Below are positions 56,178 to 59,295 of a stretch of 64,000 bases of DNA, piece by piece. The notes below the pieces were generated by a model. The model was not told where the DNA came from, searched no databases, and was given only the letters and a program-made list of their open reading frames with translations. The position numbers and the translations under genes were made by a program. The first letter of the stretch is position 1. Each line of letters starts with the position of its first letter. The stretch is from the sequence record NC_041917.1; one strand, written 5' to 3'.

Positions 56178-56232
56178 TAGAATCTAACAGCAATCAAAAC
56201 TCATTGGATATATGAAAAAAGATAGATTCTAG
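56178..56232 (+). ncRNA. minimal ACAGCAA element
   Basis: AGAATCT/AGATTCT flanks; TCAT-TGGATAT-ATGA hairpin; abuts tRNA-Ile(GAT). Confidence 0.65.
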
Positions 56233-56237
56233 TATTT

Positions 56238-56310
56238 GGGAATATAATTCAGTTGGTAGAATGCTCGACCGATAATCGAGTCGCCGCTGGTTCGAGTCCA
56301 GCTATTCCCA
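56238..56310 (+). tRNA. trnI: tRNA-Ile(GAT)
   Basis: CTCGA-CCGATAA-TCGAG. Confidence 0.9.
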
Positions 56311-56409
56311 CGAAGTAGTTCAGTACTGAAAAATGTACAGTGAAATTATTCAACACTATAGGTAGCACTTTGAATGAATCAGTAAGCCTATAAGTAACTA
56401 CAATAAATT

Positions 56410-56538
56410 TGGAATTCAACAGCAATTCACTTACTAAAAACAGCTACCTCACGGTTTGTAGGTTCAAGTCCTACCTTGTACTTTCGAGTACATGTGGTGA
56501 AAATGGTAAACACGGCTGTCCAAAAGAAATGAATTCCA
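56410..56538 (+). tRNA. circularly permuted class II tRNA (Leu TAA-like) inside ACAGCAA element
   Basis: order: TGGAATTCA, ACAGCAA, 3' anticodon strand ACAGC, variable arm, T arm, acceptor 3' strand, TTCG loop, acceptor 5' strand, D arm, GCTGT, TGAATTCCA. Confidence 0.75.
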
Positions 56539-56590
56539 GTATTAATTAAGACATAAATATTCTTATACACTTTTTTGTAAGGATATAATT

Positions 56591-57190
56591 ATGGAAATGA
56601 AAAAGTTGATGGAAGATATTTCTGCCATCATGGAAGGACAACTACCTGGTTATTATTATCATGGAAGTTCTGCCCCAATATCAAATTTTAGTGATGAGTT
56701 TGTTGGTAGAGGAAATGATGAATACGGTCCGGGAATATATTTTAGTTCAGTTCCAAATACTTCTATAGGTTATGCAAAAGATGGCGGTTCTAATGGAATG
56801 GTATATCAGTGCGAAATCAATTTAAGAAAAGAACTATCTAAAAAAACTAGAGTTAATAAAGCAGTACTATTAAAATTAATGCAAAATACACCTGATGAAG
56901 ATGCATATACTAACTGGAATGAAAATAAAAATGTTGCTTATAGAACAGCATTACAGGGTTATGTAGATGAAGGTAATATGTATGATGCGTTAATGGGTGT
57001 TTGGTACGATTGGTATAGAGAATATCCTGTTCAATTCGTGCGTTCACTAGTACAGTTAGGATATGATGGATACATATATACTTTTGCAAGCGGTGAACGT
57101 TTTATTATAGTATATAATCCAGCAAGTATAAAAGTTGTAAACACATTCAATCCAGAAGAAGCTATGCAGAAACTGATTGGAAGTGAATAA
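56591..57190 (+). CDS. ADP-ribosyltransferase-fold protein (polyvalent ART-like)
   Basis: YHGS..F, GPGIYFSS..A..YA and GYDGYI motifs. Confidence 0.55.
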   Translation: MEMKKLMEDISAIMEGQLPGYYYHGSSAPISNFSDEFVGRGNDEYGPGIYFSSVPNTSIGYAKDGGSNGMVYQCEINLRKELSKKTRVNKAVLLKLMQNTPDEDAYTNWNENKNVAYRTALQGYVDEGNMYDALMGVWYDWYREYPVQFVRSLVQLGYDGYIYTFASGERFIIVYNPASIKVVNTFNPEEAMQKLIGSE

Positions 57191-57197
57191 TAAGATT

Positions 57198-57317
57198 TGG
57201 AATTCAACAGCAAATCATTCTAAACCCGTAGCATGTCGTAGGTTCAAGTCCTACCAGTACTATCGAGTACTGTAGCTCAGTTGGTAGAGCAGCCACCTTA
57301 AAAAGAAATGAATTCCA
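57198..57317 (+). tRNA. circularly permuted class I tRNA inside ACAGCAA element (isotype unclear)
   Basis: T arm GTAGG-TTCAAGT-CCTAC, CAGTACT-ATCG-AGTACTG acceptor hairpin, then GCTC-AGTTGGTA-GAGC D arm; same flanks as 56410. Confidence 0.75.
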
Positions 57318-57348
57318 GTATTAATTAAAACAACATGAGTATAAATCA

Positions 57349-57798
57349 ATGTCTGATAAGCATCAATTTAAAGTAAACATCGGTGATTGGTCACAAGATG
57401 GTCATAATCAATATGATGTTTTAGTTCTTAACAGTACTAAACCAGTAGATGAAGTACAAAAAGCATTTAAAAAAGCTGCAACAGATTTACATTTACTAGT
57501 AAATGGTCGTTTTCTAATTGCAGATGAATTTGAAGATTGTAGTCTATCTGAAGACCATGCAGAAGTTCTTAAAAATGCAGGTGTAAAATTTGATGATTTA
57601 GTGTATAATGATGGCGATGATGAAGAACCAAATTATATTATTGAAGGTTCAAGTGATATGACTATCCTAGTGATGCGTATCGCCCAACTTGAATTGGACT
57701 TTGAATTTGAAATTACGAATGATGCAATTCCGAACTTTAACGGGTTCTGGACAGAAGAACAAATGCCATCAATCGGATATGGTTTGTATAACATATAA
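57349..57798 (+). CDS. hypothetical protein
   Basis: IGDWSQDGH phage motif. Confidence 0.8.
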   Translation: MSDKHQFKVNIGDWSQDGHNQYDVLVLNSTKPVDEVQKAFKKAATDLHLLVNGRFLIADEFEDCSLSEDHAEVLKNAGVKFDDLVYNDGDDEEPNYIIEGSSDMTILVMRIAQLELDFEFEITNDAIPNFNGFWTEEQMPSIGYGLYNI

Positions 57799-57807
57799 AA
57801 CAAGTTT

Positions 57808-57872
57808 TGGAATCTAGCAGCACCCATAAAATGAAATCAACTGTTAATTGAAAAATTCAAAAATGGATTCCA
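57808..57872 (+). ncRNA. ACAGCAA-type element carrying only an Asn(GTT) anticodon stem-loop
   Basis: TGGAATC/GATTCCA, GCAGCA, CCAT/ATGG, TCAA-CTGTTAA-TTGA. Confidence 0.65.
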
Positions 57873-58162
57873 GCCTATTTCGGAGTAAAAAAATGTATTA
57901 TGCTCGATTAGAATATCCAAACAATGGATATGAGATTGAAAGAATACGTCTTAAAGCCTTAGATCGCAAAAAGTACTATCCAGTAGTTTCGATTGATATT
58001 GGTAGTTCAAGTACTCGCATATATCTTGAAGGTGATAAGAATGCATATAATAGTGTGAACTTTGAATTCTATACCAAACATGGTGATGAATATATTCTTG
58101 AAGATATTTTCGAAGACCCTGATTTAAACCCGTACTTGGATGATGATGACGAAGAATATTAA
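57862..58162 (+). CDS. hypothetical protein
   Basis: ORF track; start uncertain, overlaps the element. Confidence 0.65.
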
Positions 58163-58182
58163 ATAAAAATACCACAAATAAA

Positions 58183-58211
58183 TGAAACGCTTCAAAAAAT
58201 TGTGGTATAAT
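58183..58211 (+). promoter_or_regulatory. TGAAAC-class promoter
   Basis: TGAAAC-17-TATAAT before tRNA-Asn. Confidence 0.75.
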
Positions 58212-58230
58212 ATAAGTAAGTTAAACAAGA

Positions 58231-58302
58231 GGTTATGTCGTATAAAGGTTATTACGGAGAGCTGTTAACTCTTTTATCTTGGTTCGATTCCAAGCATGAC
58301 CG
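58231..58302 (+). tRNA. trnN: tRNA-Asn(GTT)
   Basis: GAGAG-CTGTTAA-CTCTT. Confidence 0.88.
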
Positions 58303-58419
58303 CAAAAAGTTAAATTCACCAGGCGTACTATGGTGGGAAAGGTATCATGATACCAATTCGAATAGAATACGTATTAAACCCTTGAACGGTTTTCTGTAAA
58401 CTCAATTTAACAAATAATT

Positions 58420-58474
58420 AAGAATCTAACAGCAATAAAAACTCATTCGATTATATGAAAAAAGATAGATTCTT
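58420..58474 (+). ncRNA. minimal ACAGCAA element
   Basis: near-copy of 56178; abuts tRNA-Gln. Confidence 0.65.
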
Positions 58475-58479
58475 GTTTT

Positions 58480-58552
58480 AGGAGTATGGTGTAATTGGTT
58501 AGCACACGTGACTTTGACTCACGTAGTTGAGGTTCGAGTCCTTATATTCCTG
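58480..58552 (+). tRNA. trnQ: tRNA-Gln(TTG)
   Basis: CGTGA-CTTTGAC-TCACG. Confidence 0.9.
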
Positions 58553-58703
58553 CAAATTAAAATTTCATTCATTTCCTTGTGTGAAACAAGCTGGTATGAT
58601 TCCCCTTGCTTGTAAAATTATCGAACGGGAACCGCGTTGCACCTGTACAGGTCAGATTGTAAAGATCGAGTATGTACAGTACTGAGAGCGGCAGTACAAC
58701 AAA

Positions 58704-58785
58704 GCGGGATTAGCTCAGTGGTAGAGCACTTGCCTTCCAAGCAAGAGGCGAATAGGTTCCATCGGTTCGAATCCGATATTCCGCT
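58704..58785 (+). tRNA. trnG: tRNA-Gly(TCC) with unusually long variable region
   Basis: CTTGC-CTTCCAA-GCAAG; 15-nt variable region. Confidence 0.85.
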
Positions 58786-58903
58786 CAAACTAAACAAACA
58801 ATAAGGTGATTTTTATGCTATAGAATCCTAGTACTGGTCCTCCTAAAGAATTTAATTCTGATATAAACAACTCAAAATTAAACTACTATAGGAAGAACAT
58901 ACC

Positions 58904-59230
58904 ATGTTAAACAAAGAACAATATATTACTGTAAAAAATACTTGGAAAGCTGTAAAAGAACATAACATTTTTGATCATGTGATCTATAATGTACTTCGTG
59001 GAGTCCCATCTGATACTGGTTTCGCACCAATTACAGACAGGGGTCGTTTACACGCTAACAACAATGACCCGTTCAATATGTACAATTTCGCAGTTCGTGA
59101 AATTCATTATGAATTAAACGAAAAACGGTACAATTACGAAAAGACAGTAAAGCATTATTCTGAACTATTCGGCATTGAATTTACAAAAGAACTCATCGAA
59201 GAAATTGTTTCTTTGATTAAAGTTAAATAA
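58904..59230 (+). CDS. hypothetical protein
   Basis: SD AGGA. Confidence 0.8.
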   Translation: MLNKEQYITVKNTWKAVKEHNIFDHVIYNVLRGVPSDTGFAPITDRGRLHANNNDPFNMYNFAVREIHYELNEKRYNYEKTVKHYSELFGIEFTKELIEEIVSLIKVK

Positions 59231-59238
59231 CAGAATTA

Positions 59239-59295
59239 AAGAATCCAGCAGCAACTAAAACTCATTCGCTTAATATGAAAAAGAAACGGATTCTT
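59239..59295 (+). ncRNA. minimal ACAGCAA-type element (GCAGCAA)
   Basis: AAGAATCC/GGATTCTT; compensatory change (T-A to C-G) versus 58420. Confidence 0.65.

What the first reader, a model, noticed from the sequence alone, without database searches (positions are those of the whole stretch)
56178..59295. Three near-identical minimal elements, two immediately upstream of intact tRNAs
Seen: 56178, 58420 and 59239 share AGAATCY-A(A/G)CAGCAA-N-AAAACTCATT..ATATGAAAAA..RGATTCT, with a small TCAT/ATGA hairpin whose loop varies (TGGATAT, TCGATTAT, TCGCTTAAT). The first ends 5 nt before tRNA-Ile(GAT) and the second 5 nt before tRNA-Gln; the third precedes a CDS. Inference: this is the smallest functional or mobile form of the element, possibly a processing site that releases the downstream tRNA.
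Basis: partly seen in the sequence, partly recalled or inferred. Interest (0 to 1): 0.65.

Follow-up and report, generated by a model that had tools for sequence, protein, structure and literature searches.

The report
Minimal phage Y-like RNAs in tRNA array
The three short repeats are the smallest members of a family of small structured RNAs that giant phages place among their tRNA genes, and they most likely dock onto the phage's own Ro60-like protein and do not serve to cut out the neighbouring tRNAs.

Summary
Three 55-58 nt elements (56178-56233, 58420-58476, 59239-59297, + strand; Serratia phage BF) share an 8-bp closing helix, the motif (A/G)CAGCAA beside its 5' strand, a UCAU/AUGA hairpin with a variable loop and an xGU tail. 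Two lie 6-7 nt upstream of tRNA-Ile and tRNA-Gln.

They are the smallest of at least 15 same-strand copies of one RNA module in this window. Other copies enclose permuted tRNA-like bodies (weak Rfam YrlA match) or interrupt tRNA-like genes.

The helix covaries strongly across distant phages. The module co-occurs with a DUF2828 gene, tested in both directions. BF's copy (gp180) folds like Ro60.

The build (G-start stem, CUUACAGCAA, variable core, stem, UGU, about 55 nt) matches Dictyostelium Class I RNAs, which were reported as unique to those amoebae.

Best reading (0.6): these are minimal Y-RNA-like partner RNAs whose helix plus ACAGCAA is the protein handle. They are probably released from tRNA-array transcripts by the tRNA-processing enzymes. 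Binding and RNA ends are inferred only, because no RNA data exist.

Tight tRNA adjacency is family-wide (31 and 33 of 110 minis), but 18 of 20 BF tRNAs lack the element and the same element also precedes protein genes.

Earlier agents of this scan noted this family on this window and in Yersinia and Vibrio phages. I re-tested their key claims myself.

The parts
56178..56233 (+). Mini element A: 8-bp closing helix (56178-56185 / 56224-56231), AACAGCAA (56186-56193), hairpin UCAU/AUGA with loop UGGAUAU (56201-56215), A-rich 3' side, GU tail
   Evidence: model R1 scores 72.2 bits; 98% identical in Yersinia phage Yen9-03 at the same site
58420..58476 (+). Mini element B: helix 58420-58427 / 58467-58474, AACAGCAA 58428-58435, hairpin UCAU/AUGA with loop UCGAUUAU (58443-58458), tail GU
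   Evidence: R1 scores 73.8 bits; a mini occupies the site before tRNA-Gln in all six related phages examined
59239..59297 (+). Mini element C: helix 59239-59246 / 59288-59295 (AGAAUCC/GGAUUCU, a compensatory change relative to A and B), AGCAGCAA 59247-59254, hairpin UCAU/AUGA with loop UCGCUUAAU (59262-59278), tail GU; 10 nt after an ORF stop and 20 nt before the next ORF start
   Evidence: R1 scores 64.6 bits
56238..56311 (+). tRNA-Ile(GAT) directly downstream of A; its anticodon loop is CCGAUAA (C at position 33)
58480..58553 (+). tRNA-Gln(TTG) directly downstream of B
57809..57874 (+). Sibling mini D: same handle; inner hairpin with loop CUGUUAA (the tRNA-Asn anticodon loop)
54084..54143 (+). 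Sibling mini E: same handle; inner hairpin with loop CUUUUAA (the tRNA-Lys anticodon loop); 5 nt after a tRNA-like gene
56411..56540 (+). Larger family member: handle enclosing a permuted tRNA-like body (T arm, acceptor closed by a loop, D arm)
57199..57319 (+). Larger family member: handle enclosing a permuted tRNA-like body; partial Rfam YrlA match at 57231-57293
52561..53541 (+). Four further handle-enclosed tRNA-like RNAs (52561-52680, 52861-52981, 53234-53349, 53386-53541)
46918..48691 (+). Three tRNA-like genes interrupted by the same module turned inside out, i.e. 3' side, stem, loop, stem, ACAGCAA (46918-47033 with variant ACGGCA; 47364-47489; 48567-48691). A fourth lies at about 29107-29223

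Best explanation
Each of the three elements encodes, or is cut out as, a roughly 55-nt structured RNA. These are the minimal form of a phage family of Y-RNA-like RNAs.

The 8-bp helix formed by the RNA's two ends, the single-stranded (A/G)CAGCAA next to its 5' strand and the xGU tail together form a constant 'handle'. This handle most likely docks onto the phage's Ro60-like protein (gp180, DUF2828 + DUF7788, encoded about 200 kb away, next to an Rnl2-type RNA ligase and a 2H phosphoesterase).

The small hairpin (UCAU/AUGA with a GAU-containing loop) is the variable, displayed part. In sibling copies the same position holds anticodon-loop look-alikes or whole tRNA-like bodies.

The RNAs are transcribed with the tRNA cluster. 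They are probably freed by the enzymes that mature the flanking tRNAs, with RNase P at the downstream tRNA's 5' end setting the small RNA's 3' end. This would explain the tight spacing.

Shown: the conserved RNA structure, the family, the tRNA-array residence, the gene-RNA co-occurrence and the Ro60-like fold.
Inferred: binding, processing and biological role (tRNA repair, or a contest with tRNA-cutting host defences).
For: RNA-level structure:
- The closing helix is 94.9% paired over 50 distinct sequences. 7 of 8 pairs show compensatory changes; slid controls give 28-48% paired.
- In the alpha subtype the inner hairpin also covaries (UCAU/AUGA to UUCU/AGAA) while the loop GGAUAU is kept.
- All 53 model hits, and all copies in the window, lie on the transcribed strand.

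Partner protein:
- BF encodes a DUF2828 + DUF7788 protein.
- Its AlphaFold model (pLDDT 90.5) matches Ro60 structures over the full length: 2i91 at E 7.7e-10 and TM 0.59, plus human Ro60, D. radiodurans Rsr and Thermus phage Ro60.

Linkage, protein to RNA:
- In 80 phage loci found with the protein, a strict module scan gives 45 hits on the gene strand, 9 on the opposite strand and 5-9 in all (both strands together) in shuffles.
- 13 of 31 model hits lie within 160 nt of the gene, against about 1 expected.

Linkage, RNA to protein:
- Of 119 loci found with an RNA pattern alone, 30 contain a DUF2828 gene.
- 4 of 5 large contigs without the gene in the fetched stretch encode it elsewhere, including both complete genomes.

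Context:
- gp180 sits beside an Rnl2-type ligase, a 2H phosphoesterase and a CCA-adding enzyme.
- The larger paralogue at 57231-57293 matches the tRNA-like core of Rfam YrlA (40 bits, E about 1e-6).
- 31 and 33 of 110 minis abut a tRNA start or end.
- The alpha element is 92% identical between BF and CBB, while the surrounding region is about 76% identical.
Against: - No RNA data: no RNA-seq run holds this phage, and laid contigs say nothing about RNA ends. Expression, ends and binding are therefore untested.
- In BF the protein gene is about 200 kb from the RNAs.
- The handle sequence differs from the Ro60-binding motif of known Y RNAs (GNCGAAN0-1G, PMC4201824).
- The Pfam TROVE model does not detect gp180.
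- The minis themselves hit no Rfam family.
- The RNA-ligase neighbourhood of the protein gene is not general: only 2 of 75 distant loci have it by tblastn.
- The three alpha loops are not canonical anticodon loops (G or C at position 33), so what they display is unclear.
- Thermodynamic stability is modest (z = -2.2, -2.2 and -1.1).
Confidence: 0.6

Rival explanations
1. RNA cut-and-rejoin signal. The helix plus ACAGCAA marks sites where a phage or host endonuclease cuts and a ligase (for example the Rnl2-type gp178) rejoins. This would splice the interrupted tRNA genes and circularise the permuted ones. The minis would then be empty signals, excised from the transcript perhaps as small circles.
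For: - The same module occurs turned inside out within tRNA-like genes.
- Removing the 49-nt insert from 48567-48691 restores a perfect tRNA-Lys(UUU) anticodon arm (CG+ACA / UGUCG).
- The insert in 47364-47489 lies next to an intact CUGUAAA loop.
- Six copies have the permuted order: 3' half, loop, 5' half.
- An RNA ligase and a 2H phosphoesterase lie beside gp180.
Against: - No tRNA-splicing endonuclease and no RtcB is found in the genome.
- No bulge-helix-bulge geometry.
- The permuted copies do not give clean 7-nt anticodon loops when joined (and direct reading).
- Minis have nothing to rejoin, yet they are the commonest and best conserved form across phages.
- Direct linkage to a Ro60-like, non-catalytic protein gene.
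Confidence: 0.15
2. One reading: a processing site in the 5' leader that releases the downstream tRNA.
For: - A and B end 6-7 nt before tRNA-Ile and tRNA-Gln.
- A mini sits before tRNA-Gln in all six related phages checked, with similar spacing.
- 31 of 110 minis have a tRNA start within 12 nt downstream.
Against: - 18 of 20 tRNAs here have none.
- C, and the homologous copies in CBB and GAP32, precede protein genes.
- tRNA-Ile lacks it in CBB, XbC2 and Kaldavass.
- As many minis follow a tRNA (33 of 110) as precede one.
- 23 of 110 have no tRNA within 1 kb, and 13 lie directly before the DUF2828 gene.
- No known self-cleaving ribozyme family matches.
Confidence: 0.07
3. Cis-acting regulatory structure for the gene that follows, for example an operator bound by the Ro60-like protein that controls translation or stability. 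On this reading it is not a free small RNA.
For: - C and D end 20 nt before ORF starts.
- In distant phages the module often lies 3-66 nt upstream of the DUF2828 start codon, which would suit autoregulation.
Against: - Most copies flank tRNAs, which are not translated.
- The larger copies are tRNA-like RNAs in their own right.
- Dictyostelium RNAs of the same build are abundant free RNAs (PMC7919456).
Confidence: 0.08
4. DNA-level feature: either a miniature inverted-repeat mobile element, or a plain transcription terminator.
For: - 7-8 bp terminal inverted repeats.
- Copies are present or absent between phages (before tRNA-Ile).
- U-rich runs follow B and C.
Against: - Strict single orientation: 53 of 53 model hits and 15 of 15 in the window.
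- Compensatory base changes keep the pairing.
- No target-site duplications.
- Conserved single-stranded motif.
- The terminator scan calls none of the three, and the helices are AU-rich and long-range.
Confidence: 0.04

Closest known systems
Dictyostelium Class I (type-I) non-coding RNAs
   Same: - Length 42-65 nt.
[quoted passage not shown]
- A conserved motif lies directly after the 5' strand.
- The published search pattern is GTTGRCCTTACAGCAA ... GTCAACTG (PMC5054030). Compare the phage GGAATCT-TACAGCAA ... AGATTCC-(A/U)G(U).
- The positions reported as near-invariant (T3, C6, C9, A10, A11; PMC7919456) include C6, C9, A10 and A11, which are the phage's ACAGCAA.
- Variable core; tail ends in UGU; many clustered gene copies; structure of the stem is conserved, not its sequence.
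   Different: - Eukaryotic genes with their own upstream promoter element (DUSE).
- The known direct binder is an RRM protein (Rnp1A/CIBP).
- No tRNA-like cargo forms are described, and there is no tRNA-array setting.
- They were reported as unique to Dictyostelia.
- Whether Dictyostelium has a DUF2828 protein could not be tested here.
- Common descent is not shown; the similarity could be convergent.
Bacterial and phage Y RNAs (YrlA / YrlB, Rfam RF02553) with Ro60/Rsr
   Same: - A terminal helix serves as the protein handle, with a variable effector module.
- Long forms carry a permuted tRNA-like domain with a closed acceptor stem (partial YrlA match); short forms lack it, like YrlB.
- The partner has the Ro60 fold and lies beside an RNA ligase, as rsr does beside rtcB.
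- The RNA gene is often next to the protein gene.
   Different: - The handle sequence is (A/G)CAGCAA, not GNCGAAN0-1G (PMC4201824).
- The protein belongs to DUF2828 and is missed by the TROVE model.
- There are at least 15 RNA copies per genome, in three topologies, embedded in tRNA arrays.
- The minis score nothing against RF02553.
Intron-containing and circularly permuted tRNA genes processed at bulge-helix-bulge motifs (archaea, Cyanidioschyzon)
   Same: One and the same RNA motif is found both inside interrupted tRNA genes and at the outer ends of permuted ones.
   Different: - No bulge-helix-bulge geometry.
- No splicing endonuclease gene.
- Insert positions are 28/29 or 31/32, not 37/38.
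- The free-standing minis have no counterpart in that system.

Membership tests
Y RNA (Ro60 partner RNA) | A Ro60/TROVE-fold protein is encoded in the same genome, often adjacent | tested here: met
   gp180 has the Ro60 fold (Foldseek E 7.7e-10, TM 0.59). Adjacency holds in distant phages: 13 of 31 hits lie within 160 nt of the gene. The reverse test gives 30 of 119 loci with the gene. In BF itself the gene is about 200 kb away.
Y RNA (Ro60 partner RNA) | Physical binding to Ro60 | not testable with these tools
   Needs RIP/CLIP or EMSA. The complex predictor offered here takes no RNA.
Y RNA (Ro60 partner RNA) | Helix formed by the 5' and 3' ends, carrying the conserved 5'-strand motif GGUCCGA / GNCGAAN0-1G | tested here: not met
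   The terminal helix is present and covaries, but the motif is (A/G)CAGCAA, placed after the helix. The published motif is given in PMC4201824.
Y RNA (Ro60 partner RNA) | Match to Rfam YrlA (RF02553) at its gathering score of 69 bits | tested here: not met
   There is no hit on the three minis. The larger paralogue scores 40.3 bits, on the tRNA-like core only.
Dictyostelium Class I RNA | RNA of 42-65 nt with a short stem joining its ends | tested here: met
   55-58 nt with an 8-bp helix; covariation shown.
Dictyostelium Class I RNA | 11-nt motif CCTTACAGCAA directly 3' of the 5' stem strand | tested here: met
   The phage has (A/U)ACAGCAA or AGCAGCAA directly after the stem. Sibling copies read CTTACAGCAA. 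The published pattern is in PMC5054030.
Dictyostelium Class I RNA | 3' end CUGU, with the C pairing to the 5' G | tested here: inconclusive
   B and C read ...UCU-UGU and A reads ...UCU-AGU. The G at +2 is invariant in 15 of 15 minis. Distant phage minis mostly end ...CC-UGU. The mature ends are unknown.
Dictyostelium Class I RNA | DUSE promoter about 60 nt upstream; dictyostelid genome | tested here: not met
   This is a phage operon setting, 10 nt after ORF stops or next to tRNAs. The resemblance is one of build; membership is not claimed.
Intrinsic terminator | GC-rich hairpin directly followed by a U tract | tested here: not met
   The scan calls no terminator at any of the three. The helices are AU-rich and enclose 36-39 nt.
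Miniature inverted-repeat transposable element | Terminal inverted repeats with target-site duplication and insertion in either orientation | tested here: not met
   One orientation only. The flanks are not duplicated. The sites are syntenic across genera.
tRNA intron / permuted-tRNA splice motif (bulge-helix-bulge) | Bulge-helix-bulge structure and a splicing endonuclease | tested here: not met
   PF01974 is absent from the genome, RtcB is absent, and no 3-4-3 bulge geometry is seen in the folds.
Self-cleaving ribozyme in a tRNA leader or trailer (hammerhead, HDV-like and others) | Match to a known ribozyme family | tested here: not met
   No ribozyme family appears in Rfam 15 even at E up to 10 over 56150-59320.

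The most novel reading that the evidence does not exclude
The phage handle and the Dictyostelium Class I RNAs are one ancient RNA-protein system. DUF2828/Ro60-like proteins would then be the missing partner of Class I RNAs.

Within it, the three alpha minis are non-cleavable baits. Their loops keep the Ile anticodon GAU but replace the universal U33 with G or C, as does the phage's own tRNA-Ile (CCGAUAA). The Ro60-like particle would present these loops to trap or sense host nucleases or enzymes that act on the tRNA-Ile anticodon loop.
Probability: 0.15. Interest if true: 0.85.

Novelty: new variant of a known kind. Interest (0 to 1): 0.68.

Why it matters
If the reading holds, giant phages carry a whole set of Ro60-type ribonucleoproteins with interchangeable RNA 'heads': bare hairpins, anticodon-loop copies and full tRNA look-alikes, all on one constant handle. 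This would widen the Y RNA concept to a second protein family (DUF2828) that so far has no assigned function.

It would also give a first clue to what the orphan Class I RNAs of social amoebae bind. And it would point to a new layer in the fight between phages and tRNA-targeting bacterial defences.

For annotation, it explains dozens of 'empty' gaps in phage tRNA arrays and several apparent broken tRNA genes.

The three minis are the simplest experimental handle on the system. They are about 55 nt long and have only two helices, which suits binding and structure work.

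Tried and rejected
- **Rfam 15** at permissive thresholds: nothing on the minis, only tRNAs and a sub-threshold YrlA match on a larger paralogue.
- **Pfam TROVE in the genome:** no match.
- **Single-sequence AlphaFold of gp180:** unusable at pLDDT 44. It was repeated with a 51-sequence alignment.
- **ESM Atlas:** returns only DUF2828 clusters and no taxonomic clue on Dictyostelium.
- **Sequencing runs:** no RNA run holds the phage. Laying four contig runs on 56100-59400 (3301 letters, within the operators' limit) showed only near-identical strains, with nothing on RNA ends or on element loss.
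- **Promoter and terminator scan:** at background level.
- **Mini-ORF idea:** the alpha elements contain ATG AAA AAA GAT AGA TTC TAG. Rejected because there is no ribosome-binding site and the ATG is lost in the GAP32, XbC2 and Kaldavass variants (AUAGAA) while the hairpin is kept.
- **Displayed loop matches the neighbouring tRNA** (A's GAU loop lies next to tRNA-Ile): rejected as a rule, because only 1 of 16 minis with an adjacent tRNA shares its anticodon.
- **RNA-ligase linkage of the DUF2828 gene outside the Rak2-like lineage:** not found by tblastn (2 of 75 loci).
- **tRNA-splicing endonuclease and RtcB:** absent.
- **Literature:** searches for permuted tRNA in phages, YrlA in phages, TROVE in jumbo phages and DUF2828 found no description of this module.

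Full report
**Where the window lies.** The window is bases 248001-312000 (+ strand) of Serratia phage BF, a 357-kb Rak2-like jumbo phage. All genes around the finding are on the + strand. ARAGORN finds 20 tRNAs in the window.

**Observation.** The three elements are real.
- A 27-nt pattern built from their shared 5' half hits only 56179, 58421 and 59240, with none expected by chance.
- Each has an 8-bp helix formed by its two ends: U/A + AGAAUCY pairing with RGAUUCU + A/U.
- The octamer (A)(A/G)CAGCAA lies directly after the 5' strand.
- After a 7-nt spacer ending AAAAC comes a 4-bp hairpin, UCAU/AUGA, with a loop of 7, 8 or 9 nt (UGGAUAU, UCGAUUAU, UCGCUUAAU).
- An A-rich 3' side, the 3' strand and an xGU tail follow.
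- A and B are 90% identical. C is 74-79% identical to them.
- A's helix ends 6-7 nt before tRNA-Ile(GAT) and B's 6 nt before tRNA-Gln(TTG). C lies between two ORFs, 10 nt after a stop and 20 nt before a start.

**The family.** The three are not alone. The looser pattern RRAATYYARCAGCA gives 11 hits against 0.9 expected. Stem-aware scans raise the count to at least 15 copies between 29.1 and 59.3 kb of the window, all on the + strand. They come in three topologies.
1. Five minis: the three of this finding, plus 57809 and 54084. The inner hairpin loops of those two are CUGUUAA and CUUUUAA, the anticodon loops of tRNA-Asn and tRNA-Lys.
2. Six RNAs in which the same helix and motif enclose a tRNA-like body in permuted order (T arm, acceptor stem closed by a loop, D arm). 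One of them matches the tRNA-like core of Rfam YrlA at 40 bits, below the 69-bit threshold.
3. Four tRNA-like genes in normal order that carry the module turned inside out (A-rich side, stem, hexaloop, stem, ACAGCAA) within the anticodon stem region. For 48567-48691, removing 49 nt restores a perfect tRNA-Lys(UUU) anticodon arm.

**Is it an RNA structure?** Yes.
- I built a covariance model from 15 minis of BF, Yersinia phage Yen9-03 and Pectobacterium phage CBB.
- It found 53 matches at E up to 1 in the window and 77 other phage loci, every one on the strand of the local genes.
- On that alignment the closing helix is 94.9% paired. 7 of 8 pairs show changes on both sides (99 cells, against 32 in shuffles). 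Sliding one strand drops pairing to 28-48%.
- Within the alpha subtype (the three elements and their relatives in six phages), the inner hairpin changes from UCAU/AUGA to UUCU/AGAA by two compensatory pairs while the loop keeps GGAUAU.
- Thermodynamic stability alone is unremarkable (z about -2, -2 and -1). The case therefore rests on covariation and strand bias.

**Relatives and 'mobility'.**
- Element A is 98% identical in Yen9-03 at the same site, although the tRNA-Ile behind it is a quite different sequence there.
- CBB, XbC2 and Kaldavass have no element before tRNA-Ile.
- The site before tRNA-Gln is occupied by a mini in all six phages, but with different interiors: alpha in BF and CBB, a short CACGGUG type with a weakened motif in Yen9-03, XbC2 and Kaldavass, and another type in GAP32.
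- The site of C holds an alpha interior in CBB and GAP32 but the Asn-type interior in Yen9-03.
- Sites are therefore stable while interiors are exchanged.
- There are no target duplications and only one orientation. This argues against a transposon-like element.
- The alpha element is 92% identical between BF and CBB, where the surrounding region is about 76% identical.

**The likely partner.**
- The Pfam TROVE model finds nothing in the genome.
- Following a lead from earlier notes of this scan (DUF2828), I found one DUF2828 + DUF7788 protein of 508-522 aa at genome position 101477-103003. RefSeq annotates it as 'RNA-binding protein' gp180.
- A single-sequence fold failed. With a 51-sequence alignment the model reaches pLDDT 90.5.
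- Its best structural matches in the PDB, over the full length, are all Ro60: Xenopus 2i91 and 1yvp, human 9nen, D. radiodurans Rsr 2nvo and Thermus phage phiLo 9l5y (E down to 7.7e-10, TM 0.59). vWA domains follow.
- Two genes upstream lies an Rnl2-type RNA ligase (PF09414 with an OB domain). Just downstream is a 2H 'Swiss-army-knife' phosphoesterase, and 3 kb on a CCA-adding enzyme. This echoes the bacterial rsr-Y RNA-rtcB arrangement.
- The ligase linkage does not extend to distant phages by tblastn.

**Gene-RNA linkage, tested both ways.**
- Protein to RNA: 80 viral loci were fetched with the protein alignment (42-92% identity, 10-kb flanks). They contain 45 strict modules on the gene strand, 9 on the other strand and 5-9 in all (both strands together) in shuffles. 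Of 31 model hits in the non-Rak2 loci, 13 lie within 160 nt of the gene, mostly 3-66 nt upstream, against about 1 expected.
- RNA to protein: an RNA-only pattern (GGAT N5 CAGCAA N25-50 ATCCTGT) pulled 119 viral loci of about 9 kb, and 30 of them contain a DUF2828 gene. Of five large contigs without the gene in the fetched piece, four encode it elsewhere, including both complete genomes.
- This is strong evidence for a functional pair. It is not evidence of binding.

**What the minis display.**
- Among 110 distinct minis, 85 have a hairpin of at least 4 bp with a 7-nt loop (33 in shuffles).
- 37 of those loops have the tRNA signature U33/R37 (4.5 in shuffles). The commonest are UUU, UGU, GUU, UGA, GUA and GAU.
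- One distant phage shows a perfect CUGAUAA, the Ile loop.
- The alpha loops of this finding contain GAU in most variants (UGGAUAU, CGGAUAU, UUGGAUAAU, UCGAUUAU), but with G or C where tRNAs have U33. C's loop has GCU.
- BF's own tRNA-Ile also has C33 (CCGAUAA).
- Whether alpha is an Ile-type bait is speculation.
- The displayed triplet matches the neighbouring tRNA in only 1 of 16 cases. A's position next to tRNA-Ile is therefore probably a coincidence.

**tRNA adjacency and processing.**
31 of 110 minis have a tRNA start within 12 nt downstream (typically 6-11 nt). 33 have a tRNA end within 12 nt upstream (typically 6 nt). Many are sandwiched between two tRNAs, and 23 have no tRNA within 1 kb.
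- The minis thus sit in tRNA arrays with tRNA-like spacing.
- Most tRNAs, here and elsewhere, need no such element, and the same elements also precede protein genes and the DUF2828 gene.
- The economical inference is that RNase P and tRNA 3'-end processing liberate the small RNAs, not the reverse. This step is inferred, because no RNA data exist for this phage.

**Comparison with known systems.**
- The closest match in build is the Class I (type-I) RNA of Dictyostelium. It is 42-65 nt, has a short G-start stem joining the ends, an 11-nt motif right after the 5' strand, a variable core and a 3' CUGU (PMC7919456).
- The published search pattern GTTGRCCTTACAGCAA ... GTCAACTG (PMC5054030) contains the phage motif almost letter for letter. 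Sibling copies here read GGAATCTTACAGCAA ... AGATTCCAG.
- Those RNAs were reported as unique to dictyostelids.
- In function and partner the closest are bacterial and phage Y RNAs. These have a terminal-helix handle for Ro60, long forms with a permuted tRNA-like domain (YrlA) and short forms without it (YrlB) (PMC4201824).
- Membership in either family is not claimed. The Y RNA handle motif and the Rfam threshold are not met, and the dictyostelid promoter and host are not met.
- I found no paper that describes the phage module. A jumbo-phage survey mentions ROT/TROVE proteins 'with a tRNA-like partner' only in passing (PMC7824862).

**Earlier notes of this scan.** Other agents had already described this module on this window (interrupted tRNAs; the Lys-type mini at 54084) and in Yersinia and Vibrio phages. 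They had proposed the Ro60-like DUF2828 partner and the Class I resemblance. I used those as leads and re-tested the fold, the linkage in both directions, the covariation and the literature pattern myself. New in this report:
- the alpha subtype and its inner-hairpin covariation;
- the site-versus-interior comparison across six phages;
- the family-wide tRNA spacing statistics;
- the negative test for matching anticodons.

**Verdict.** Best explanation (about 0.6): minimal Y-RNA-like, Class-I-like small RNAs that dock on the phage's Ro60-like gp180. Main rival (about 0.15): a cut-and-rejoin signal.

Noticed in passing
window 56238-56311: BF's tRNA-Ile(GAT) has C instead of the near-universal U at position 33 (anticodon loop CCGAUAA). 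The tRNA-Ile at the same site in Yersinia phage Yen9-03 is a quite different sequence with a normal CUGAUAA loop.
   Followed up: partly
window 54006-54078: A tRNA-like gene (Rfam tRNA 36 bits, not called by ARAGORN) with an aberrant anticodon region (GCCAU GCGAAAA CGGUG). Mini E follows it after 5 nt.
   Followed up: no
L027, L042, L055, L072, L082, L086, L088 (about 10-70 nt upstream of the DUF2828 start): In distant phages the module copy directly in front of the Ro60-like gene often has a loop containing CAUAA: 9-nt loops such as UUUCAUAAU or AUUCAUAAA, or the 7-nt AGCAUAA. This is Met/Ile2-like. It could be an autoregulatory leader or a dedicated partner RNA.
   Followed up: no
genome 99795-107462 (outside the window; L094): gp180 (Ro60-like) sits in an RNA-end-repair neighbourhood: an Rnl2-type ligase with an OB domain (gp178), a 2H 'Swiss-army-knife' phosphoesterase (gp183) and a CCA-adding enzyme (gp188). 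This neighbourhood is not conserved in distant DUF2828 loci.
   Followed up: partly
window 58182-58211: The best sigma-70-like promoter match of the region, with an extended -10 (TG-n-TATAAT), lies 20 nt upstream of tRNA-Asn. The promoter count for the whole region is at background level.
   Followed up: no
window 58304-58419, 58554-58703 and 56312-56410: Three stretches of 100-150 nt between tRNAs and elements have no ORF, tRNA or Rfam match. Relatives (Yen9-03 g456, CBB_460) have small CDSs in the Gln-Gly gap. They may be further small RNAs or gene remnants.
   Followed up: no
L006 4969-5028 (Yersinia phage Yen9-03): A Lys-type mini whose loop is CAUUUAA, i.e. the tRNA-Lys loop with U33 changed to A. 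Together with the G33/C33 alpha loops, this suggests that position 33 is a preferred site of variation in these display hairpins.
   Followed up: no
L096, L131, L133, L135, L142 and others: Many loci pulled out by the RNA pattern alone are very dense tRNA arrays, with 20-38 tRNA genes in 15 kb or less and minis interleaved at tRNA-like spacing.
   Followed up: partly
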